Shown here in pieces: positions 2,050-53,668 of a stretch of 64,000 bases of DNA. The position numbers and the translations under genes are program-made. The DNA is taken from sequence record NC_070957.1. One strand, given 5' to 3'. Positions within the stretch are counted from its first letter, which is position 1. Each line of letters opens with the position of its first letter. Below the pieces are notes generated by a model. That model had not been told where the DNA came from. It worked only from the letters and a program-made list of their open reading frames with translations, and made no database searches.

Positions 2050-2271
2050 ATGCCCATTGTGGAAATCTTTCTTGGTTTGTTGGCTTTACTGTACCTGTTT
2101 ATAGGTTGGGAGATTTTCGCACCTATGGGTTGGTACTTCGGTGAGTCGTTCAAACGGACCTGGTATAACAACGTGTTATACTTTATCGCATTCCCCACTG
2201 CTGTTGTGATGTGGTTGCCGATTCTCGCAGTCATTGTCATTGGTGGGGTGACGTTTAACCGCAAACCGTAA
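2050..2271 (+). CDS. Small membrane protein (2 TM)
   Basis: GGAG RBS; two hydrophobic segments; followed by a terminator. Confidence 0.75.
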   Translation: MPIVEIFLGLLALLYLFIGWEIFAPMGWYFGESFKRTWYNNVLYFIAFPTAVVMWLPILAVIVIGGVTFNRKP

Positions 2272-6607: not shown

Positions 6608-7990
6608 ATGACCGACGAACAATATATCAATGAAGAGGTAAGTGAAATGAACCAACATGATAACACGTTCCAGGTTGGACTCCGCCGTCTCCAAATCGCC
6701 ATTTCCGGTGGTTGGGGTGAAAAGGAGCGTCAGATCGCTAAGGCGGCAACAGAGCTCTATATGAAGAACAAGCGCGAGTTCTTGCTCTGCAAAGACCCTG
6801 TTGCGTTAGCAGGAATGATGGGTAATACTGAGCGTTACCCTGAACTCGAGGGACTCCTGGAAACAGGGACTATCGCAACCAATGCAATCCTTCACGCATT
6901 TGTATCCACCACTCAATTTAACTACAAGTATGATGAGTGGGCCGGCGATACCATGGATTACTGGGGTGTCAATCCCGGTACCATCAAGAACAAGTTTGAA
7001 CACTGGTACCTGGAACTCATTCGTCAGCTGATGACTGAGACCTCCAAGGATGATCGCACTGGAACAGGGACTCGTTCCCTGACCACCGCCGTGTACAAAC
7101 ACGATCTTCGTGAATCGTTCCCTCTGCTCCGTAGCCGATTCCTGAAACCGGAGAACCCTGGTAAGGAATACATCTGGATGCTTTCCGGTTCCAACAACGA
7201 AAAGGAACTGGCTGCAATGGGTGTTCCCTTCTGGAGCGAGTTTGCCGATGAGACCGGTGATCTGGGTCCTGTGTACGGTTACCTGTGGCGCTACTGGCCT
7301 AATGGTGACGGCACCACCACCGACCAAATCGAATACGTTCTGGAGACTCTCCGCAAGTCCCCTGAAAGTCGACGTGCTGTGGTCAGTTGTTGGCACCCTG
7401 GGTTGATCCCCGATAGCAAGACTCCGCCCAAGGAAAACTACAAGGTAGGGAAACAAGCACTGACTCCGTGTCACTATGCTTTCCAATTCCTGGCAAGTCC
7501 CATCGGGTTCTGTGAGCGTCTGGCGTGGGCTAAACAACACAAGCCCGAACAGATCGCATTCCTGTATCCCGTGACCGGGTATGACTGGACCGAAAGGACA
7601 GAAGAAGCAATGAATCGGATTGGAGTACCCAAGTACTACCTGGACCTCCAATTCAACATGCGGAGCTCCGATACTGTTCTGGGTCTTCCGGCAAACTTCA
7701 ACTTCTACGGGCACATGTGTCACGCATTCGCCAAAGAGTTGAACATGGTTCCTCGTTTCCTGTCCTACACCGGGACTGACGTCCATTTGTACGTCAACCA
7801 TATCAAGGGTATGAAAGAAGTCTTTGATTGGGTGAAACAAAACAAAGAGAAAGTCTTTGACGAAGTATCCCAAATCAAAATCGTGGGTGAGTTCGAAAAC
7901 CTGTACGACATGAAGCCTGAAAACTTCGAGTACATCAACTACAGCCGTGAGCTGGTCGGTCCGGCCAAACGCTTCCCGGTTGCTGTTTAA
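6608..7990 (+). CDS. thyA: Thymidylate synthase with N-terminal extension
   Basis: DRTGTGT, FPLL, GDLGPVYG, DQI, SRRAVV, LTPCHY (catalytic Cys), RSSD, GLPAN, DVHLYVNH. Confidence 0.95.
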   Translation: MTDEQYINEEVSEMNQHDNTFQVGLRRLQIAISGGWGEKERQIAKAATELYMKNKREFLLCKDPVALAGMMGNTERYPELEGLLETGTIATNAILHAFVSTTQFNYKYDEWAGDTMDYWGVNPGTIKNKFEHWYLELIRQLMTETSKDDRTGTGTRSLTTAVYKHDLRESFPLLRSRFLKPENPGKEYIWMLSGSNNEKELAAMGVPFWSEFADETGDLGPVYGYLWRYWPNGDGTTTDQIEYVLETLRKSPESRRAVVSCWHPGLIPDSKTPPKENYKVGKQALTPCHYAFQFLASPIGFCERLAWAKQHKPEQIAFLYPVTGYDWTERTEEAMNRIGVPKYYLDLQFNMRSSDTVLGLPANFNFYGHMCHAFAKELNMVPRFLSYTGTDVHLYVNHIKGMKEVFDWVKQNKEKVFDEVSQIKIVGEFENLYDMKPENFEYINYSRELVGPAKRFPVAV

Positions 7991-9517: not shown

Positions 9518-10663
9518 ATGCATTTCTCTAAACCTCGTTTGGTAGTTGGTTTCGATATGGATGACACCATGTGTCAAACCGGCGAATACATCAAACAAGC
9601 CATCCGGCATTTCGCCCTCAAAACCAACAACAAAGACTTGTTGGACTACCTGGATCGGACAGTAGAACTTTCCACTATGCACTACGAACCCTGGGTCAAA
9701 GACCTGGTTTGGTCCGAAGTGGTTAGTAATGGTCGCTTCATGCTCGACGCTCTCCCCACTGACATCTGTGAAAATGGTGGGTTGGTAGATCGTGTCTCCC
9801 TTTTCCGTGACGAAGAGTGCAAACACGGTGAAGTCGCACTTGTAATCTGTACTCACCGCGGGTTCCATGAACAAGGTAAACTGTTCACCGAGACCTGGCT
9901 CAAGGATAGGGGACTGGATTGGGTCTTTGATGAGATTCACTGTATCTCCCCCGAGGAACACAAGGATAAGATCAAGTATCTGAAAGAGCAATATCCTGGT
10001 TCCCACATCCTGCTGATCGACGACAACCCGATGGGTGAGTCCGCACCTCACACCCCTGCCATGGACGAACTTATCATCTACGATAAGTACACCAAGTTCC
10101 AGGCGTATAAAGATCAGGTTACCTACCAATCTGATAATCAAGTTATCGAGATCATGCGTGATCGCTTGAAAAAGCAAACCCCGCTGACTATCGAGATGTA
10201 TGACAGTGGCAAAAAGATCGAAGCCAAGCACTACCTGGGTGTTGGTCAAATGGTTCGTCAACTCCTGGTTGTTGAACATCAATACGCCAAGTCTCTTTAT
10301 GAGACGTCCGGTCTGATCGATCCGAGCACTTCAATCAACGAACTCGTTGAGTATATCTCTGGATACGATAGCTCCGCTGTCAAATCGTTTATTCTGTTTG
10401 CTGATGGTGAACCGGTCGGATACACCCGAGCTTTCAATGATGGTGATCCGGCGCACTGGAACCTCTGTGCCTTCGTCATCGACGAAGCCGTTCGGGGGAA
10501 AGGTTTCGGTAAACAGTTCGTTCGTCTGGTAGAAAACAAACTCAAGGCCAATGGTGCCGAAGAGATTGTCCTGGATCACAAATACGATAACAACCAAAGT
10601 GCTGCCTTCTGGCAAAAACTTGGTTATATCCCGCACACTGTTGTTTGCTCGAGGAAACTGTAA
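9518..10663 (+). CDS. HAD-family phosphatase fused to a C-terminal GNAT acetyltransferase
   Basis: HAD motif I FDMDDT and motif IV LIDDNP; GNAT motif A VIDEAVRGKGFGK and N--SAAFWQKLGY. Confidence 0.8.
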   Translation: MHFSKPRLVVGFDMDDTMCQTGEYIKQAIRHFALKTNNKDLLDYLDRTVELSTMHYEPWVKDLVWSEVVSNGRFMLDALPTDICENGGLVDRVSLFRDEECKHGEVALVICTHRGFHEQGKLFTETWLKDRGLDWVFDEIHCISPEEHKDKIKYLKEQYPGSHILLIDDNPMGESAPHTPAMDELIIYDKYTKFQAYKDQVTYQSDNQVIEIMRDRLKKQTPLTIEMYDSGKKIEAKHYLGVGQMVRQLLVVEHQYAKSLYETSGLIDPSTSINELVEYISGYDSSAVKSFILFADGEPVGYTRAFNDGDPAHWNLCAFVIDEAVRGKGFGKQFVRLVENKLKANGAEEIVLDHKYDNNQSAAFWQKLGYIPHTVVCSRKL

Positions 10664-11244
10664 TGACCAAAGCACTCTTTTCCGCAATCTGGGCTCAAAC
10701 CGCTACTGGTGGTATGGGTATCCACAACACCCTCCCTTGGCCGCACTCTCCTGCCGACATGGAATGGTTCCGTAAACACACCATGGGGAAACCCATCGTG
10801 ATGGGTCACAACACCTACAAGTCCTTGGGTATCCATCAACTCAATGGCCGGTTGAACGTTGTGATTTCAAAGACACAACCAGTGGGTGCGGAACACCTCA
10901 ATACCTACAACGGTCATGAGACCAATGAAGGGTTGTACTGGATCGAGTCTGTTGAACGTTTCCTGGAAACCGTTCCCAGTGTTTGGGACACCAAGGAAAT
11001 CATGATCATCGGTGGTCCGAAAACTTACGTTGAGTTTAAGGAAGTCATTGAGCGTGTCTACACCACCACCTTCATGGGTGAGTTCGAAGCCGAGATTGGA
11101 CTCTGTTCACAGACCGATGCCGAGGAAGCGTTCCACACCGTTTACTATGATGAGTTCTCATCTAAAGAAGTAGTGTTCCGGATACTGGAACGTATCGACC
11201 CGTCAGACGAACTCGACATCGAGGTGTGGAAAGTTAATGATTGA
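10663..11244 (+). CDS. folA: Dihydrofolate reductase
   Basis: AIWA...GGMG..NTLPW...DMEWFRKHTMGKPIVMGHNTY..LNGRLNVV..IIGG; TAATG coupling. Confidence 0.92.
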   Translation: MTKALFSAIWAQTATGGMGIHNTLPWPHSPADMEWFRKHTMGKPIVMGHNTYKSLGIHQLNGRLNVVISKTQPVGAEHLNTYNGHETNEGLYWIESVERFLETVPSVWDTKEIMIIGGPKTYVEFKEVIERVYTTTFMGEFEAEIGLCSQTDAEEAFHTVYYDEFSSKEVVFRILERIDPSDELDIEVWKVND

Positions 11245-11473
11245 TCCAAGCATTTACGTTTCCATTCTGGTGATCATCGCTGCTATCGTCTGGCTGGTGA
11301 TCGGTGTGAATATCTCAGCCAGAGTTCATTGGGCTTTTGGGACCTCGCATAACACCATGCGATTTGGTTCGCGTCTGAAGAACAACGCCATTTTCATCGG
11401 CAACGCTGTCTTTTGGCCATGGTTGGGATTGTTCTTTCTCTACGCAATCCTCGAAGCAAATTTCGATCGTTAA
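11237..11473 (+). CDS. Small membrane protein
   Basis: Two hydrophobic segments; followed by a terminator. Confidence 0.7.
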   Translation: MIDPSIYVSILVIIAAIVWLVIGVNISARVHWAFGTSHNTMRFGSRLKNNAIFIGNAVFWPWLGLFFLYAILEANFDR

Positions 11474-11478
11474 TAAAT

Positions 11479-11512
11479 AGCTCTTTGGGGTTTCGACCCC
11501 AAAGAGTTTTTA
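11479..11512 (+). terminator. Rho-independent terminator
   Basis: agctctttggggt-ttcg-accccaaagagtt plus T tract. Confidence 0.85.
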
Positions 11513-11525
11513 TTTGTCTATAGTT

Positions 11526-11549
11526 TTTGAAGCAGATATTATTAGGGTG
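11526..11549 (+). promoter_or_regulatory. Putative early promoter
   Basis: tttgaagcagatattattagggtg motif match. Confidence 0.6.
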
Positions 11550-11569
11550 TAAACAACAGGAGAACTCTC

Positions 11570-11662
11570 ATGGGATACTTTATATTGCTTTTGCTTTTGA
11601 TCGCTGTTCTGGTTAAACTGAGCCGGATAGAAAAGAAGTTGGGGAGAAAGAAAGATGTCTGA
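11570..11662 (+). CDS. 30-aa single-TM peptide (not in the ORF track)
   Basis: CAGGAG RBS; MGYFILLLLLIAVLVKLSRIEKKLGRKKDV; stop overlaps the clpP start. Confidence 0.6.
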   Translation: MGYFILLLLLIAVLVKLSRIEKKLGRKKDV

Positions 11663-12377
11663 TCAAGAAAAACCTGTTATCAAGATTAACACATTCAGCT
11701 TCTTGTGTGACATCGATGATCAGGCGTTGCACAAGTTCTTCGAGTTCTACGACTCGATGTCTGTCAAAGACGGATTGATAATCAATGTCTCGAGTGATGG
11801 CGGGAACCCGGAAGTAACACTGAAGATCCAAGACTTCGTGACATCCAGGAACCGTCCCACTCTGGTTGTTGCAATCGGTGATTGCTCCAGCGCTGCGGTG
11901 GGATTCTTCGGAATACGAGGGACTACCAGACTCGCGTACAGCAGTTGCCGGTTCATGGAACATCAACTCTTACTGAACACCCCCAAGATGAGTATTGAAT
12001 CCATCTGCTCGTCCATTGATGAAGTTCAGTCCAGATCCCATCTCTTTGAGCAACGTCTCACCAACTGGTGTGGGTTGAGGGAAGAGGAGTGTAAAGAACT
12101 CTTCAGTCCAAACGACCTTTACTTTGATGCAATCGATGCATTGATGTTTGGGACTCGTGGTATTATTGACGGGATCATCATCCGTCAACTGGACGACTTC
12201 GAGTGGATCGTTCTCACCAGGGATGGGTTCAAACGTTTCATGTTCCCCAGGGATATCATCGATGAGAACCCGGTATTAACAGATGAGGAGTTAAAAGAAT
12301 ATGGGTTGAAACCCTATAAACCCGATAACGTTATCAAAGCGATAGAGCGACGTAAACATCGTCAAAGTCTCGCTTAA
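11655..12377 (+). CDS. clpP: ClpP-like serine protease (peptidase S14)
   Basis: VSSDGG (INSPGG equivalent), GDCSSAA (Ser), FMEHQ (His), NDLYFDA (Asp), GIIDGII. Confidence 0.82.
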   Translation: MSDQEKPVIKINTFSFLCDIDDQALHKFFEFYDSMSVKDGLIINVSSDGGNPEVTLKIQDFVTSRNRPTLVVAIGDCSSAAVGFFGIRGTTRLAYSSCRFMEHQLLLNTPKMSIESICSSIDEVQSRSHLFEQRLTNWCGLREEECKELFSPNDLYFDAIDALMFGTRGIIDGIIIRQLDDFEWIVLTRDGFKRFMFPRDIIDENPVLTDEELKEYGLKPYKPDNVIKAIERRKHRQSLA

Positions 12378-12406
12378 TCACAACACACTTAATAAAGGAA
12401 CCAGAC

Positions 12407-14035
12407 ATGTCCATTCTGAATGATGTAACTTATACCAACCGTGCCGGCACTCGTGAGATCATCGACGAGGTTGTCCAGGAGGCATTCGATAGCGTTTGTT
12501 CCACCATGGGTCCGGATGGTAACTACGTCGTGATCAACCAATCCAACGTTCCGGTTACCACCAAAGACGGTGCTTCCGTAGCCAAGGCATTGGACTTCGG
12601 TGAAACCCGTCGGAACATGATCGCGCAACTGGTTCGCGAACCGAGTCTCCGAGTAGAGCGTGAAGTCGGTGATGGTACTACCACCACTGTCTTCATGACC
12701 ACCAAGCTCTATCAGGCGTTCTGTGACAACATGACTTTCCGTGAAATCCGTTTCATCGATTCCATGGTTGGTAAAGCGCTCGAGGCGCTCCGGAAACTGA
12801 TCATCCCGGTCAAAGCGAGCTCCCCCGAGTTTAAGCTCATGTTGACTACCACTGCGAACTATGAGACCGAGATCGTTGAACGCATCCTGGAGCTCTATCA
12901 GGGCGATGCTCTCCCGAACATCACGCTTCGGAAGAATCCGAGTATCCCCGAGGACCGTGTTGAGCGTGTCACTGACCTCCGTTACAACGGCGCGTATCCA
13001 TCACCTGAAATTCAGGCTATGAGTAAAGCTCCTCGTAGCCGGATTACTTTTGGTGCTGGTACAACCGTGGTCGTGGTCGACAGTAACATCGAGACCATCC
13101 AGATGGGTGATCTGGCACGTTTGGCACAACCTGGTGGGGATCCGGTAGTTATCATCGCTACCAGCTTCTCTATGGCTGCTATCCAGGCCATCAAGGGTTA
13201 TTACCAGATGGCTAACGAAGAAGCACTGAAAGCACTCCAGGCTGATAAGAGTGCCAATGTCGCATTGACTGCACCTATTGTTCCGTTCACTGTTCAAGCA
13301 GGCGGGACTCTGGGGAAAGCAATGTTGCTGGAAATGGCACAACTGCTGGGTCTGACAACTGCGGTCGATCTGTCCAATGGTATCACCCTCGCCAAAGAGT
13401 GTGATGCTCCTTTCGTTCTGAGTCAAGACGGTGTGACCATTCCTCGGGAATGCGAGCATGTGGAAACTCGCCGGAAAGAGATGTTGGAAATCAACACCGC
13501 TCAGTACGAAGAGCTCGATCAAGCTACTCGTCAAAAGGCACCCGGCCTGATGCTGTTCGAACGCATCGGGATTCTTTCTGGTACCAACATCACTGTCAGT
13601 GTGACCGGCCAAACAGAAAGTGACTGTTCTGAACGTTACTATCGTTACGAGGACGTCATCACCGCTGCCCGTAGTTCACTCGGGTTCGGTGTACTTCCTG
13701 GTATCGGTTGGGGGTATCTGCAAGCAGCTAAAGAAGTCGAGGACCACTTTTACGAAGTGGGGATCACCCAGAACCAACGTATCCTGATGGATAAGTTCCT
13801 GGATGTTCTTCGTGCCCAGTACACCTACCTCACCGGTAATGTTTACCGTGACATGGATCGTGTCTCCTTCCTGGATCTCACCACTGGTGAAGAATCCAAG
13901 GATCCTGGCAAGGTCTATGATAACGCCGCTGCAACCTGTCTCGCTCTTGAGAGTGGTTGGGGTGCTGCCAAGACCCTGGGTAAACTGAGTACCATCACTG
14001 GTCGTGGTGATACCAACTATCTCCACAAGCGTTAA
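12407..14035 (+). CDS. groEL: Phage chaperonin (GroEL-like; EL gp146/OBP gp246 type)
   Basis: STMGPDG, TTKDGASVA, GDGTTT, RYEDVITA, GVLPGIG; 542 aa; no GGM tail. Confidence 0.92.
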   Translation: MSILNDVTYTNRAGTREIIDEVVQEAFDSVCSTMGPDGNYVVINQSNVPVTTKDGASVAKALDFGETRRNMIAQLVREPSLRVEREVGDGTTTTVFMTTKLYQAFCDNMTFREIRFIDSMVGKALEALRKLIIPVKASSPEFKLMLTTTANYETEIVERILELYQGDALPNITLRKNPSIPEDRVERVTDLRYNGAYPSPEIQAMSKAPRSRITFGAGTTVVVVDSNIETIQMGDLARLAQPGGDPVVIIATSFSMAAIQAIKGYYQMANEEALKALQADKSANVALTAPIVPFTVQAGGTLGKAMLLEMAQLLGLTTAVDLSNGITLAKECDAPFVLSQDGVTIPRECEHVETRRKEMLEINTAQYEELDQATRQKAPGLMLFERIGILSGTNITVSVTGQTESDCSERYYRYEDVITAARSSLGFGVLPGIGWGYLQAAKEVEDHFYEVGITQNQRILMDKFLDVLRAQYTYLTGNVYRDMDRVSFLDLTTGEESKDPGKVYDNAAATCLALESGWGAAKTLGKLSTITGRGDTNYLHKR

Positions 14036-14040
14036 TTGAA

Positions 14041-14070
14041 AGGGAACCCCGAAGGGTTCCCTCTCTTCTT
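14041..14070 (+). terminator. Rho-independent terminator
   Basis: agggaaccc-cgaa-gggttccct followed by a pyrimidine/T-rich tail. Confidence 0.8.
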
Positions 14071-14137
14071 TACACATTTTATTTTTGTCTCCAACCAGTA
14101 TCTGTTGTAACTCAATTACCAACTAAAGGAATGAGCG

Positions 14138-14980
14138 ATGTCTAAAGTGCATTTTATCTATGGTCCCATGAACAGTTCTAAGACCACCACTTTGATCACC
14201 ACTGCATACAACTATCGTGAAGAAGCACAGAACCCGGTCATCATGAAACCTTCCCTGGATACTCGGGATGGCGTTGAACCGATGATAAAGTCTCGTCCTG
14301 GTCTGACCGCTGCCTGCCAACTTTTCGACAAGAGTGAGAATCTCTTCGTCAAGGTCGCTGCACTCTCTGGAGCTACCCAGGAAGAACTGAACTGGCTGGA
14401 AGAAAACCTCCCTCCTCGACCCGCACCGGATGTAGCCGAAATGGTCTCTGGTATCAGAACCGCCTGGATCAACAAGGGGGTGATGCTCAAGGACATCCTC
14501 CCTGGCTATGACCAAAGTCGTCTTGACGAACTCAGCGAGATGCTGAAGACCCAGAAAGTCAGGGTGAAAGAATACCAGTACACCCGCCACCAAACTCTGG
14601 AACTCTTCGGGACCCGCATCAATAAAACCATCGACTGTGTTCTGGTTGATGAAGTTCAGTTCCTGACCGAGGAACAGGCCCTCGATCTCCTGGACATCGC
14701 CGATTATCTCCGTATCCCTGTAATGGCCTTTGGTCTCCGGAACGACTTCAAGGGGGAGATCTTCCCTGCCTCCAAGATCCTGATGGCTCAGGCAGAAGTC
14801 TGTAAAGAGAACAAGGGTGTGTGCTGGTGTGGTCGTAAGGCTACCCACGTGCTCCGCATAGCCGAAGATGGTACTGTGGATACTGATGGTCCTCAGGTTA
14901 AGGTTGGTGGTAATGACACCTACAAATCCGTCTGTCGCTATCACCACCGTGCAGGTATGTATCGTAAGCCAGGGATTTAA
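14138..14980 (+). CDS. tdk: Thymidine kinase with an about 85-aa insertion
   Basis: GPMNSSKT P-loop, VLVDEVQF, AFGLRNDF, CWCG, VGGNDTYKSVCRYH. Confidence 0.92.
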   Translation: MSKVHFIYGPMNSSKTTTLITTAYNYREEAQNPVIMKPSLDTRDGVEPMIKSRPGLTAACQLFDKSENLFVKVAALSGATQEELNWLEENLPPRPAPDVAEMVSGIRTAWINKGVMLKDILPGYDQSRLDELSEMLKTQKVRVKEYQYTRHQTLELFGTRINKTIDCVLVDEVQFLTEEQALDLLDIADYLRIPVMAFGLRNDFKGEIFPASKILMAQAEVCKENKGVCWCGRKATHVLRIAEDGTVDTDGPQVKVGGNDTYKSVCRYHHRAGMYRKPGI

Positions 14981-52080: not shown

Positions 52081-52830
52081 GTGATCGATATCACTACTCT
52101 TAAACATGATCGAGGGCTGCCTAGCGCAGTCCTCAAACTCATGCCTGATGGCTCCGCTGTCGCTACCAAGCGATTGAAGTGTTGTATACCCAAGAACTGG
52201 GAGCGGAGTAATCTTGCTGAGATCGCTGACGTTGTAACGACTATTCTGATGGTGGGTTTGATCTGTGACGGTAAGTATGCAATGCTGGGTGGAATGACTC
52301 GCATTGTTATGAAACCGGGTGAGATCGATGAAATCTCTATCGGTGGTACTCGGTACTACATCTTTGATTTCGAGCCGGGTGAAGTGGTTATCGAGAACAT
52401 GACCATTCCTCAGGACAGCAACATCGGATATTACTACTACCTCGAGTTCACCAAATATGCTCGACTGCCGTGGTATTGTTCCGAGGCCAGTTTGCTCGCC
52501 GTTTACGACGCAGCAAAGTTCTACACTGGCAAAGGGTTTGGGACCAGTAACCAATGTATCCGGGTTTTGTACGCGCTTGTAATGCGTGATCCCAACAACC
52601 TGGATTTACCATTCCGTTACTCCCCTGATTTAAACAAAGGTGGGAAACCGAAAATCATCGGTATCAACAACCCGGGTCAACTGCTCAACAGTACCTTCTC
52701 TCGTCTCTCGTCTGGTTATATGGCTGATAACATCATCGGTGGTATCCTCAACCCTGATACGAAGGTTACTGAGCTTGAAGAAGTAATCCGTGGTCTTCCT
52801 GCCGAACTGAGAGACAATAGCAATGTCTGA
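52081..52830 (+). CDS. Conserved phiKZ gp176-like protein
   Basis: GTG start; 249 aa; synteny. Confidence 0.65.
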   Translation: MIDITTLKHDRGLPSAVLKLMPDGSAVATKRLKCCIPKNWERSNLAEIADVVTTILMVGLICDGKYAMLGGMTRIVMKPGEIDEISIGGTRYYIFDFEPGEVVIENMTIPQDSNIGYYYYLEFTKYARLPWYCSEASLLAVYDAAKFYTGKGFGTSNQCIRVLYALVMRDPNNLDLPFRYSPDLNKGGKPKIIGINNPGQLLNSTFSRLSSGYMADNIIGGILNPDTKVTELEEVIRGLPAELRDNSNV

Positions 52831-53668
52831 AATTAGTTTCGGGAATATCATCCTGGCTAACAGCGGTAAACAGGGCATACTGAAACCCGACGCTACCGGT
52901 CGTTATCTGTTGAATGCTGGCGGGTTCAATATCGCCAATGCTAGCGGGATTAACTATCCCGCTAACCAATACATCGTCTCCCAGATGGACAAGAACTCCG
53001 ACCTGATGCGTCGTGTCAGTCAGGGTTATTGCAAGATGGAAGTTGAACATCCGGAACCTTTCGTTTACGTGGAAGAGAACGGCGTTCGTTACAAGAAAGC
53101 AATGACTTCCATTCTGGAGTGGATCAACCGGCTCCGTAGCTACGATCCTGATCGTATTTGCGGGCTCATCAGCGAGATCTCCTTCCGTCCCACAGATCCC
53201 AACGATCTGACCAAGCCGATCTACAACATGATCTACTGTGAACCCTTCGGTCCCCGTGGACCTGAGTTCAAAGAGTCGCTGAACAACCCCCGTCACAACA
53301 CGGCCGTTTCCATCCGTACTCAGGTTTCTCCTTTCCGTCCTGGTGACAACAAGAAAGAAGTTGAGTACTGGGTTGGTTATGACTGGGTCGGTGAACCTGG
53401 TATGGTTCATGCCAACAAGCACATGACCGCTGGTTGTGAATCGCTGATCCTCAATCTGAACGACAACGTACAGAAGTTCAAAGTCGCTGACGTTCTGGAT
53501 GCAATGGAAGAGATGTTCACCGATGCCACCGCTAATGCTGAAGCTCTGGAGCGGGTTGGTGGTATGGAGTCTCTCAATGCCATGCGTGAAATGCACGACC
53601 GTCTGAAACAGAATTACCGCACAGGCGAAACTGTTCGGATGGGTGCCAGCTTTGCCGATATCTTCTAA
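52823..53668 (+). CDS. Prohead (head maturation) protease, phiKZ gp175-like
   Basis: GGFN, MEVEHP (His), NTAVSIRT (Ser), YDWV.EPG. Confidence 0.82.
   Translation: MSEISFGNIILANSGKQGILKPDATGRYLLNAGGFNIANASGINYPANQYIVSQMDKNSDLMRRVSQGYCKMEVEHPEPFVYVEENGVRYKKAMTSILEWINRLRSYDPDRICGLISEISFRPTDPNDLTKPIYNMIYCEPFGPRGPEFKESLNNPRHNTAVSIRTQVSPFRPGDNKKEVEYWVGYDWVGEPGMVHANKHMTAGCESLILNLNDNVQKFKVADVLDAMEEMFTDATANAEALERVGGMESLNAMREMHDRLKQNYRTGETVRMGASFADIF

What the first reader, a model, noticed from the sequence alone, without database searches (positions are those of the whole stretch)
11570..14035. Early proteostasis operon: TM micropeptide, ClpP-like protease and GroEL-like chaperonin
Seen: promoter motif, 30-aa TM peptide, ClpP with a full Ser-His-Asp triad, GroEL, then a terminator. 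No GroES or Clp ATPase is in the window, and a separate gp175-like head protease exists, so this ClpP is unlikely to be the prohead protease. Known: EL gp146 and OBP gp246 chaperonins work without a co-chaperonin; ClpP normally needs ClpX or ClpA. Inference: a paired fold-or-degrade module in which the phage ClpP hijacks or poisons host ClpX/ClpA/ClpP rings (redirecting degradation of antitoxins or defence proteins), or partners the heptameric chaperonin.
Basis: partly seen in the sequence, partly recalled or inferred. Interest (0 to 1): 0.65.

Follow-up and report, generated by a model that had tools for sequence, protein, structure and literature searches.

The report
Phage ClpP-like protease and chaperonin operon
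A giant Aeromonas phage transcribes an unusual ClpP-type protease, which lacks the parts that normally couple ClpP to its ATPase motors, in one early unit with its own GroEL-like chaperonin; many related phages keep this arrangement, but nothing yet shows that the two proteins act together.

Summary
The window is Aeromonas phage D3 (phiKZ-like, genus Ludhianavirus), record positions 186001-250000. A terminator (11479-11508) and an early-type promoter motif (11535-11549) precede a 30-aa hydrophobic ORF. Then come a 240-aa ClpP-fold protein with a Ser79-His103-Asp154 triad, a chaperonin 42% identical to OBP gp246, and a second terminator (14041-14062). The whole genome has no GroES, Clp ATPase or ClpS. 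A canonical prohead protease lies at 52823-53668.

The protease belongs to a small divergent family (85 hits among 1.84 billion representatives). Ser and His are invariant in it. The ClpP N-terminal gate and helix A are missing, the aromatic ClpX/ClpA docking pocket is not conserved, and there is a family-specific C-terminal extension. This argues against hijacking of host ClpX/ClpA and for an ATPase-independent peptidase.

The gene lies upstream of the chaperonin in most OBP-clade phages and in six metagenome contigs, often with a 2-TM protein (phrog_9878; in D3 at 11237-11473). It has been lost from pAEv1810 and pEt-SU, which keep the chaperonin, so the pairing is not obligatory.

The genes are already annotated, and this scan has noted the same unit in sister phages.

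The parts
11237..11473 (+). 78-aa two-transmembrane protein (phrog_9878). It is homologous to the N-terminal half of the gene that lies between the ClpP-like gene and the chaperonin in other phages.
   Evidence: phrog_9878 E 1.4e-10. The same PHROG matches the N-terminal half of N1M2 gp193, Yubaba_01100 and the SXP01 141-aa protein, and also AH04 gp230 and CF8_0197. Shared motif W-x-F-G-T-S ... W-P. dN/dS 0.11 against LAh10.
11479..11519 (+). Intrinsic terminator of the preceding unit: a hairpin at 11479-11508 and a T-rich tail TTTTTATTTGTCT.
   Evidence: 13-pair stem with 6 GC pairs. The tail resembles the phiKZ terminator tail TTATKYYGT reported in PMC10914365. Comparable hairpins with a T-rich tail stand at the same place in CF8 and OBP.
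11535..11549 (+). Early-type (virion RNA polymerase class) promoter motif GATATTATTAGGGTG. The predicted transcript start is G11549.
   Evidence: 11 matches against 0.9 expected in the window. The same motif stands upstream of the unit in CF8, OBP, AH04, SXP01, Yubaba, ZPAH34, AerS_266, PS1 and five metagenome contigs. It fits the AR9 early consensus ...ATATTAT-(6N)-G+1 (PMC5312081). No RNA data were listed.
11570..11662 (+). 30-aa ORF with a hydrophobic N-terminus and a basic tail. It is the first ORF on the predicted transcript, and its stop overlaps the next start codon.
   Evidence: ORF and Shine-Dalgarno sequence. Intact in D9 and LAh10. There are only 3 nucleotide differences from LAh10, 2.5 of them nonsynonymous, so coding selection cannot be judged. 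No family match.
11655..12377 (+). 240-aa divergent ClpP-fold serine peptidase (D3 gp068). Triad Ser79-His103-Asp154, no N-terminal gate or helix A, and a family-specific C-terminal extension (residues about 180-240).
   Evidence: PF00574. AF2 model with pLDDT 95 and pTM 0.90. ClpP structures match at Z about 19, rmsd about 2 A, over model residues 10-178. Invariant G49, G50, S79, H103 and D172 in 34 family members. dN/dS 0.053.
12407..14035 (+). 542-aa GroEL-like chaperonin of the OBP gp246 type (D3 gp067).
   Evidence: phrog_5725 E 1e-96. PF00118. 42% identity to OBP gp246, PDB 6HDD. GDGTTT nucleotide-binding motif invariant. dN/dS 0.019.
14041..14062 (+). Intrinsic terminator hairpin that closes the unit.
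   Evidence: 9-pair stem with 6 GC pairs, followed by a T-rich tail.
52823..53668 (+). Context only: the canonical phiKZ-type prohead (head maturation) protease. Its presence shows that the ClpP-like gene is not needed for that role.
   Evidence: phrog_3014 E 3e-74. Homologues in 254 phage records, including phiKZ-size Pseudomonas phages and SPN3US-like phages. It lies beside virion structural genes.

Best explanation
The region is an early transcription unit of the phiKZ-like Aeromonas phage D3. It was inherited from the common ancestor of the OBP-like clade of jumbo phages.

The unit encodes two main proteins. The first is a catalytically competent peptidase with the ClpP fold. It has lost the N-terminal axial gate, helix A and the aromatic docking pocket through which ClpP is coupled to ClpX/ClpA, and it has gained its own C-terminal beta extension. 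The second is an OBP gp246-type chaperonin, a type that works without a co-chaperonin.

I infer that the peptidase assembles into ClpP-like rings with an ungated pore. In that form it would cut peptides and unfolded or loosely folded proteins without any AAA+ partner, early in infection, while the chaperonin folds phage proteins. On this reading the two are co-regulated members of one proteostasis programme, often together with a small 2-TM membrane protein, and are not an obligatory physical machine.

Shown here: the fold, the triad, the missing N-terminal elements, purifying selection, the conserved promoter and gene order, and natural loss of the peptidase.

Inferred: ring assembly, independence from an ATPase, the substrates, and early timing.
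For: - Fold. The AF2 model has pLDDT 95. The best PDB matches are all true ClpPs, at Z about 19 and rmsd about 2 A, and include the long handle helix 114-139.
- Catalysis. S79 and H103 are invariant and the oxyanion GG is invariant in 34 diverse family members. The Asp column is D in 25 of 34 and E in 6.
- Selection. dN/dS is 0.053 against LAh10.
- Missing coupling elements. Model residue 10 aligns with ClpP residue 26. The family N-termini vary from 3 to 56 residues and are not conserved. The docking-pocket aromatics are replaced.
- No phage-encoded partner. The genome has no Clp ATPase, ClpS, AAA protein or GroES.
- Unit structure. Terminators lie on both sides and an early-type promoter motif heads the unit. 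The motif is conserved across the clade and resembles experimentally defined early promoters of AR9 and phiKZ-related phages (PMC5312081).
- Chaperonin. OBP gp246, its orthologue at 42% identity, is a single-ring heptamer that is active in vitro without a co-chaperonin (PMC9598537).
- Not an obligatory pair. There is an in-frame deletion in pAEv1810. The family is absent from pEt-SU, EL, VP4B, Miami and RisingSun, with positive controls in OBP, N1M2, AH04 and Kc263.
- Prior suggestion. Iyer et al. 2021 already listed ClpP of group 1 jumbo phages among patchily distributed peptidases that are probably aimed at the host (PMC7824862).
Against: - No biochemical, proteomic or transcript data exist for this protein or any family member. 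No RNA run was listed.
- Ring assembly and an open pore are extrapolated from a monomer model and from my recollection of E. coli ClpP N-terminal deletion mutants.
- The pocket comparison rests on an alignment at 18-22% identity.
- The gene order ClpP-like then chaperonin, with only the 2-TM gene ever inserted between them, has survived divergence down to about 25-30% identity. A Kc263 paralogue moved elsewhere while one copy stayed next to the chaperonin. This could mean tighter coupling than co-regulation.
- The conserved C-terminal extension (R189 in 33 of 34 members; G191 and K193 in 30 of 34 each) has no explained role and could be a docking element for a partner.
Confidence: 0.5

Rival explanations
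1. First reader's main idea. The phage ClpP docks onto host ClpX or ClpA, or mixes into host ClpP rings, and so redirects or poisons host ATP-dependent proteolysis, for example of antitoxins or defence proteins.
For: True ClpP fold with a handle helix and an intact triad. No phage-encoded ATPase, so any ATP-dependent unfolding would have to be borrowed. Other jumbo phages encode ClpS adaptors that use host ClpAP (PMC7824862).
Against: The N-terminal loops and helix A, which contact the ATPase pore-2 loops and form part of the docking pocket, are absent. The pocket aromatics Y60, Y62 and F82 are not conserved, and the F82 column is S, A or T. The family-specific C-terminal extension starts where the ClpP C-terminus reaches the apical (docking) face, an inference from the fold. 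NCBIfam ClpP equivalog models score 22-42 bits against cut-offs of 228-361.
Confidence: 0.13
2. The ClpP-like heptamer docks coaxially on the seven-fold ring of the phage chaperonin. It would act either as a lid that stands in for GroES or as a degradation chamber fed by a GroEL-type ATPase.
For: The gene occupies the groES position, directly upstream of the chaperonin, in most OBP-clade phages and in 6 of 7 metagenome contigs. The Kc263 copy next to the chaperonin was retained. Both folds form seven-fold rings in their relatives (PMC9598537; ClpP structures). The genome has no GroES. A conserved C-terminal extension of unknown role exists.
Against: OBP, EL and AR9 chaperonins refold substrates in vitro without any partner. 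The chaperonin persists without the protease in pAEv1810 and pEt-SU, and in all more distant clades. The synteny is explained by a single ancestral arrangement. The extension is modelled as a rigid beta sheet with pLDDT 98, not as a mobile loop. The binding prediction could not be run.
Confidence: 0.12
3. The peptidase works at the membrane with the small 2-TM protein (phrog_9878), and perhaps with the 30-aa hydrophobic peptide, as a tethered protease in the manner of NfeD or SppA-type ClpP-fold enzymes.
For: A phrog_9878 2-TM module lies immediately before the protease gene (D3, CF8, ZPAH34, AerS_266, contig L021) or immediately after it (N1M2, Yubaba, SXP01, AH04, and probably OBP gp245 and pEt-SU gp168, which carry a similar 2-TM N-terminus in the alignment but no phrog_9878 match). 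In CF8 it lies inside the same terminator-bounded unit. Two family members also hit NfeD1b_N.
Against: In D3 a terminator and a promoter separate the 2-TM gene from the protease. PS1 has the protease but no detectable phrog_9878 gene. pEt-SU keeps the membrane protein next to the chaperonin without the protease. The protease itself has no hydrophobic segment.
Confidence: 0.12
4. It is a second head-maturation or virion-associated protease, as the automatic label 'head maturation protease' on several relatives suggests.
For: OBP gp244 and N1M2 gp192 give weak hits to the NCBIfam 'head maturation protease, ClpP-related' model (about 41 bits). ClpP-fold prohead proteases also lack the ATPase-coupling elements (my recollection).
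Against: Those hits are far below the cut-off of 120 bits, and D3 gives none. The gene lies among nucleotide-metabolism genes behind an early-type promoter, not in the head module. The canonical phiKZ-type prohead protease is present. A viable phage lacks the gene.
Confidence: 0.04
5. It is a catalytically dead ClpP-fold scaffold with a purely structural or regulatory role.
For: The Asp of the triad is replaced by G or T in some Chaoshanvirus members (CF8, ZPAH34, AerS_266).
Against: Ser, His and the oxyanion glycines are invariant over 34 members that are only 17-40% identical to D3. D3 itself keeps the full triad.
Confidence: 0.04

Closest known systems
Bacterial ClpP (MEROPS S14, Pfam PF00574), e.g. 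E. coli, S. aureus and T. thermophilus ClpP
   Same: The core fold is the same, including the handle helix (Z about 19, rmsd about 2 A over 163-170 residues). The Ser-His-Asp triad and the oxyanion GG lie at the same positions.
   Different: Sequence identity is only 14-22%. There are no N-terminal axial loops and no helix A. The aromatic residues of the ATPase docking pocket are not conserved. An extra C-terminal segment of about 60 residues carries a conserved [WY]-x-x-x-T-R-x-G-x-K motif. No cognate ATPase is encoded. ClpP equivalog models score far below their cut-offs.
OBP gp244 - gp245 - gp246 locus of Pseudomonas phage OBP; the chaperonin gp246 has been characterised and solved (PDB 6HDD)
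   Same: The unit is orthologous. The same early-type promoter motif and preceding hairpin are present. It has a ClpP-like gene (26% identity to D3) and a chaperonin (42% identity), within the same DHFR ... TK neighbourhood.
   Different: OBP has a 2-TM plus DUF1653-like protein (gp245, phrog_12584) between the protease and the chaperonin. D3 lacks the phrog_12584 domain entirely and carries the 2-TM module as a separate gene upstream of the terminator. D3 also has a longer C-terminal tail on the protease.
ClpP-related phage head maturation proteases (NCBIfam NF045542) and ClpP-fold membrane proteases (SppA, NfeD)
   Same: They share the ClpP/crotonase fold and are used without an AAA+ partner. 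Some family members give weak hits to these models.
   Different: The gene is not in a head module, and the phage has its own phiKZ-type prohead protease. It uses Ser-His(-Asp), not the Ser-Lys dyad that SppA and NfeD use (my recollection). Scores are far below the cut-offs.
groES-groEL operon
   Same: A gene for a protein whose fold forms seven-fold rings sits directly upstream of, and is co-transcribed with, a GroEL-type chaperonin gene.
   Different: The upstream protein is a protease fold, not Cpn10. No Cpn10 exists in the genome. Orthologous phage chaperonins work without a lid in vitro.

Membership tests
ClpP (S14, PF00574) | Score above the curated family threshold | tested here: met
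   PF00574 scores 29.9 bits against a cut-off of 20.2. 30 of 34 family members match PF00574. The NCBIfam ClpP equivalog and subfamily models, however, score only 22 bits against cut-offs of 228-308.
ClpP (S14, PF00574) | ClpP fold with the handle helix | tested here: met
   AF2 model with pLDDT 95. The top 1000 PDB matches are ClpPs, at Z 18.5-19.2 and rmsd about 2 A. Helix 114-139 corresponds to the handle.
ClpP (S14, PF00574) | Ser-His-Asp catalytic triad at the canonical positions | tested here: met
   S79, H103 and D154 align with E. coli S97, H122 and D171. Ser and His are invariant in the family. The Asp column is D in 25, E in 6, G in 2 and T in 1 of 34 members.
ClpP (S14, PF00574) | N-terminal axial loops and helix A, which gate the pore and contact the ATPase | tested here: not met
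   Only 9 residues precede strand 1. Model residue 10 aligns with ClpP residue 25-26. The ORF cannot be extended upstream. Family N-termini are not conserved.
ClpP (S14, PF00574) | Hydrophobic docking pocket for the IGF/LGF loops of ClpX/ClpA | tested here: not met
   E. coli L48, Y60, Y62 and F82 correspond to E, I, N and S in D3. The F82 column is S, A or T in 28 of 34 members. There is no equivalent of L23 or E26. The list of pocket residues is from memory, and the alignment is at about 20% identity.
ClpP (S14, PF00574) | Assembly into a tetradecamer of two heptameric rings | not testable with these tools
Only a monomer model is available.
ClpP (S14, PF00574) | A cognate AAA+ unfoldase | tested here: not met
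   The D3 genome has no AAA_2, AAA or ClpS match above cut-off. Use of host ATPases was not testable.
ClpP-related head maturation protease (NF045542) | Family score above cut-off and a position in the head module | tested here: not met
   D3 gives no hit. OBP and N1M2 score about 41 bits against a cut-off of 120. The gene lies among DHFR, TS and TK genes. A separate phrog_3014 prohead protease exists.
Phage GroEL-like chaperonin (EL gp146 / OBP gp246 type, phrog_5725) | Full-length family match, a nucleotide-binding motif, and no co-chaperonin gene | tested here: met
   phrog_5725 matches at E 1e-96 over residues 8-530. 42% identity to OBP gp246. GDGTTT is invariant. The genome has no Cpn10. 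The ring stoichiometry was not testable.
phiKZ-type early (virion RNA polymerase) promoter | An AT-rich conserved element with a start site a fixed distance downstream, and early transcription | tested here: inconclusive
   The motif is over-represented (11 against 0.9 expected) and intergenic. It is conserved across the clade and fits ...ATATTAT-(6N)-G of AR9. No RNA run was listed, so timing and the start site are unverified.

The most novel reading that the evidence does not exclude
The ClpP-like protein forms a heptameric ring that caps the single-ring phage chaperonin through its family-specific C-terminal extension. The result would be a protease chamber fed by a GroEL-type ATPase instead of an AAA+ unfoldase: a true fold-or-degrade machine. 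The small 2-TM protein might anchor or regulate it. A weak lead, from memory only: the extension in the Aeromonas clade reads W-I-V-L-T-R-D-G, which recalls the GroES mobile-loop core G-I-V-L-T-G. In the model, however, it is a rigid strand, so this may be coincidence.
Probability: 0.1. Interest if true: 0.9.

Novelty: new variant of a known kind. Interest (0 to 1): 0.48.

Why it matters
Phage chaperonins of the EL and OBP type are studied as a possible third chaperonin group that works without a lid. All of that work used the chaperonin alone.

In OBP itself, and across its clade, the chaperonin gene is co-transcribed with a ClpP-fold peptidase stripped of its ATPase-coupling elements, and often with a small membrane protein. 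This points to partners or a cellular context that the in vitro work has not examined.

If the peptidase is autonomous, it is a compact example of an ungated ClpP that a virus deploys early in infection, and a candidate host-takeover or recycling enzyme. If it docks on the chaperonin, it would be a new kind of chaperone-protease coupling.

Either way there are natural controls. pAEv1810 and pEt-SU lack the peptidase, which makes the question directly testable.

Tried and rejected
There is no result, so it says nothing about binding.
- The word-based protein search with the protease found only its own cluster.
- Two IMG/VR scans with family alignments gave nothing usable. One had no conserved stretch. 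In the other, none of the 32 pattern hits was confirmed.
- No RNA sequencing run was listed for the unit.
- No whole genome is held for the window. The D3 record was therefore searched through a locus handle instead.
- EL gp145, the gene upstream of the EL chaperonin, was tested as a possible hidden ClpP. It has no Pfam hit and no family-profile hit, so the idea was rejected.
- I first read Kc263 as a case of the protease being unlinked from the chaperonin. The profile search showed two copies, one of them about 390 nt upstream of the chaperonin, so that reading was withdrawn.
- I tested whether the long C-terminal tail of the D3 protease derives from the intervening gp245/gp193-type gene. There is no similarity, and D3 has no phrog_12584 domain.
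- Selection on the 30-aa ORF could not be judged. It differs from LAh10 at only 3 positions, and the whole 11237-11662 segment is unusually similar between D3 and LAh10 (97% against 91% in the flanking genes). This is probably a mosaic boundary.
- The motif TTATTT(N0-2)GTCT, tried as a promoter candidate, occurs only 3 times and fits the terminator tail better.
- Papers on N1M2 and ZPAH34 hold no proteomic or functional data on these genes.
Full report
IDENTITY OF THE WINDOW. The stretch 11200-14200 is 100% identical to Aeromonas phage D3 (NC_070957.1, 262,372 bp), at record positions 197200-200200. The window therefore covers record positions 186001-250000. D9, D6 and LAh10 are 92-99% identical. 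D3 belongs to the genus Ludhianavirus. It carries split multisubunit RNA polymerase genes, which makes it a phiKZ-like jumbo phage. GenBank already labels the two main genes 'putative Clp protease' (gp068) and 'chaperonin groEL' (gp067).

- The preceding gene (11237-11473) is followed by a 13-bp hairpin with a T-rich tail at 11479-11519. The chaperonin stop is followed by a 9-bp hairpin at 14041-14062.
- The motif GATATTATTAGGGTG lies between them, at 11535-11549.
- I collected the intergenic regions of the window and saw the same element after several terminators. The pattern GATATYAYYWNNGTG occurs 11 times with up to one mismatch, against 0.9 expected. Its six exact copies are all on the + strand, and the five within the annotated part I tabulated are intergenic.
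- The motif fits the experimentally defined early (virion RNA polymerase) promoter of the phiKZ-related phage AR9, AAATATATATTAT-(6N)-G+1. [quoted passage not shown]
- The terminator tails (TTATTTGTCT) resemble the conserved phiKZ terminator tail (PMC10914365).
- If the AR9 rule applies, the transcript starts at G11549. The first ORF is then the 30-aa one, which has AGGAG 7 nt upstream of its ATG. Its stop overlaps the start of the ClpP-like gene (ATGTCTGA).
- No RNA run was listed for this DNA. 'Early' therefore rests on the motif alone.

THE PROTEASE: FOLD AND CATALYSIS.
- Pfam places the 240-aa protein in PF00574 only weakly, at 29.9 bits.
- A word-based search found only its own cluster. 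An exhaustive HMMER scan of 1.84 billion representatives found just 85 proteins at E<=1e-3 and 17 at E<=1e-10. The family is small and divergent.
- In an alignment of 34 members that are 17-40% identical to D3, eight columns are invariant: G49, G50, S79, H103, G140, G166, G169 and D172.
- Against E. coli ClpP, S79, H103 and D154 fall on S97, H122 and D171. The Asp column is D in 25 members, E in 6, G in 2 and T in 1 of 34.
- D3 against LAh10 gives dN/dS 0.053 for this gene and 0.019 for the chaperonin.
- An AlphaFold2 model built on that alignment has pLDDT 95 and pTM 0.90. Foldseek and VIA-align return only genuine ClpPs at the top, at Z 18.5-19.2 and rmsd about 2 A over 163-170 residues. The match includes the long handle helix, residues 114-139.
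- This is a real ClpP-fold enzyme that looks catalytically competent and is under purifying selection.

WHAT IS UNUSUAL ABOUT THE PROTEASE.
- The structural alignments start at model residue 10, which corresponds to ClpP residue 25-26. They end near residue 178-180.
- The N-terminal axial loops and helix A of ClpP therefore have no counterpart. The ORF cannot be extended upstream. In the family, the segment before strand 1 varies from 3 to 56 residues with no conservation.
- The aromatic residues that form the IGF/LGF docking pocket of E. coli ClpP (list from memory) are not kept. L48, Y60, Y62 and F82 correspond to E, I, N and S in D3. The F82 column is S, A or T in 28 of 34 members.
- After the ClpP core comes a family-specific extension, modelled as strands 173-196 plus two short helices. 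Its motif is conserved: R189 in 33 of 34 members, G191 and K193 in 30 each, T188 in 24, and an aromatic residue at position 184 in 30.
- NCBIfam ClpP models score an order of magnitude below their cut-offs, and so does the 'ClpP-related head maturation protease' model.
- The D3 genome holds a single PF00574 gene and no AAA_2, AAA, ClpS or Cpn10 match above cut-off.
- From what I recall of E. coli ClpP N-terminal deletion mutants, they have an open pore, degrade unfolded proteins without an ATPase, and couple poorly to ClpX and ClpA. On that basis the most economical reading is an ungated peptidase that does not depend on an ATPase. This is an inference. Ring assembly could not be tested.

THE CHAPERONIN. 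The 542-aa protein matches phrog_5725 over its full length at E 1e-96. It keeps the GDGTTT motif. It is 42% identical to OBP gp246, whose structure is solved as PDB 6HDD. According to PMC9598537, OBP gp246 is a single-ring heptamer, EL gp146 is a double ring, and both act without a co-chaperonin in vitro.

CONSERVATION OF THE ARRANGEMENT.
- tblastn found the protease in 24 phage records and the chaperonin in 151.
- In CF8, PS1, PS2, AVP1, ACP1, AhC3_1, ZPAH34 and AerS_266 the two genes are directly adjacent.
- In OBP (gp244, gp245, gp246), N1M2 (gp192-194), Yubaba, Sureiya, SXP01 and AH04, one gene lies between them. In AH04 that gene is split in two.
- Seven metagenome relatives were looked up. 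Six lie directly upstream of a Cpn60 gene, five of them followed by TK. The seventh lies next to a ribonucleotide reductase gene.
- That last arrangement matches one of two copies in Kc263. The other Kc263 copy lies about 390 nt upstream of the chaperonin.
- The early-type promoter motif (A/T)AGATATTAT(T/C)A-N3-TGTA stands upstream of the unit in all of these lineages.
- Hairpins bracket the unit in CF8 and N1M2. In OBP one precedes it.

WHY THE ARRANGEMENT IS WEAK EVIDENCE FOR A JOINT MACHINE.
- The pair sits inside a longer collinear block (thymidylate synthase, acetyltransferase, DHFR ... chaperonin ... thymidine kinase) that the same phages share. The adjacency is best counted as one ancestral event.
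- The chaperonin-TK part of the block extends to more distant chaperonin clades (VP4B, Miami, RisingSun). Neither they nor EL have the protease: a family-profile search was negative for all four, with strong positive controls in OBP, N1M2, AH04 and Kc263.
- Two members of the OBP clade lost the protease but kept the chaperonin. pEt-SU has no profile hit. pAEv1810 has a 33-aa ORF made of the N-terminal and C-terminal ends of the PS1-type protein, which is a clean in-frame deletion of the core.
- The protease is therefore dispensable for at least some viable phages, and the chaperonin does not need it.

A THIRD RECURRENT COMPONENT.
- The gene between the protease and the chaperonin in N1M2, Yubaba, SXP01 and AH04 has an N-terminal two-helix membrane module (phrog_9878). 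Its C-terminal domain is DUF1653-like (phrog_12584).
- OBP gp245 and pEt-SU gp168 have a similar hydrophobic N-terminus in the alignment but gave no phrog_9878 match.
It matches phrog_9878 at E 1.4e-10 and shares the motif W-x-F-G-T-S ... W-P.
- CF8_0197 is equivalent and lies inside the terminator-bounded unit.
- ZPAH34 and AerS_266 have unannotated ORFs of the same kind between the promoter and the protease.
- D3 has no phrog_12584 domain. PS1 has the protease but no phrog_9878 match.
- The membrane protein is thus a frequent companion, not a universal one.

THE 30-AA ORF. It is intact in D9 and LAh10. Only three nucleotide differences separate D3 from LAh10 here, and the whole 11237-11662 segment is unusually similar between them, so selection cannot be assessed. 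N1M2, Yubaba and SXP01 carry short hydrophobic, basic-tailed ORFs near the same place, but in a different position relative to the promoter and without clear homology. Whether the D3 ORF encodes a peptide is plausible but open.

NOT THE PROHEAD PROTEASE. A phrog_3014 head maturation protease (E 3e-74) lies at 52823-53668 beside virion genes. It has homologues in 254 phiKZ-like records.

LITERATURE.
- Iyer et al. [quoted passage not shown] They placed it among patchily distributed peptidases probably deployed against the host.
- A 2025 paper on Aeromonas phage Z90 lists the ClpP and GroEL ORFs side by side as 'assembly-related', without any test.
- I found no paper that tests this protease, and none that examines it together with the chaperonin.

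EARLIER NOTES OF THIS SCAN. s1-161731 and s1-160865 describe the same unit in sister phages and likewise conclude that joint action is untested.
- the family-wide catalytic conservation;
- the missing ATPase-coupling elements;
- the C-terminal extension;
- the identification of the D3 78-aa gene as the membrane module;
- the natural deletions;
- the Kc263 paralogue;
- the link of the promoter motif to the AR9 early consensus.

VERDICT.
A conserved, co-transcribed protease-chaperonin unit exists. The ClpX/ClpA-hijack mechanism is disfavoured. An obligatory pairing is contradicted by natural losses.
- My best explanation, at about 0.5, is an autonomous, ungated ClpP-fold peptidase co-expressed early with the chaperonin.

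Noticed in passing
window 11237-11473: The 78-aa two-transmembrane gene upstream of the unit is phrog_9878. The same module forms the N-terminal half of the gene between the ClpP-like gene and the chaperonin in N1M2, Yubaba and SXP01, and is AH04 gp230. A weak second match lies at window 2056-2256.
   Followed up: yes
L011:3347-3448 (Aeromonas phage pAEv1810): The 33-aa ORF annotated upstream of the chaperonin is an in-frame fusion of the first and last residues of the PS1-type ClpP-like protein. It is a natural deletion of the protease core in a viable phage.
   Followed up: yes
Kosakonia phage Kc263 record, 7204-7815 and 247391-248023 (both on the - strand): Kc263 has two ClpP-like paralogues. 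One lies about 390 nt upstream of the chaperonin. The other lies next to the ribonucleotide reductase small subunit, and the metagenome protein P0021 (L027) shares that second context.
   Followed up: partly
L005:2944-3606 (SXP01); L017:2130-2371 and L018:2130-2375 approx. (ZPAH34, AerS_266): There are unannotated genes in public records. The SXP01 ClpP-like ORF (220 aa) has no CDS in GenBank. ZPAH34 and AerS_266 have unannotated 2-TM ORFs (FWWCFG ... WP motif) between the promoter and the protease gene.
   Followed up: partly
window 11237-11662 against 11655-14035, compared with LAh10 (L002): Nucleotide identity to LAh10 is about 97% over the 2-TM gene, the intergenic region and the 30-aa ORF. 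It drops to about 91% in the protease and chaperonin genes (dS 0.02-0.10 against 0.43-0.47). This suggests a recombination boundary near the start of the protease gene.
   Followed up: partly
window 368, 3699, 11535, 15016, 16595, 56733: Six exact copies of the early-type promoter motif GATATYAYYWNNGTG are present, all on the + strand; the four read in full at 368, 3699, 11535 and 16595 each lie shortly after a hairpin, while no hairpin is evident before 15016 and 56733 was not inspected. The thymidine kinase gene directly after the chaperonin terminator has no such motif.
   Followed up: partly
window 9518-10663: A 381-aa protein has a C-terminal GNAT acetyltransferase domain and an N-terminal part without a Pfam match. 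In relatives this region is annotated as two genes, HAD-like and GNAT. It belongs to the same conserved block upstream of DHFR.
   Followed up: no
window 11655-12377, residues 183-191: The conserved extension reads E-W-I-V-L-T-R-D-G. From memory this recalls the GroES mobile-loop core G-I-V-L-T-G. In the model it is a rigid strand (pLDDT 98), and only the T-R-x-G-x-K part is conserved across the family, so it is probably coincidence.
   Followed up: no
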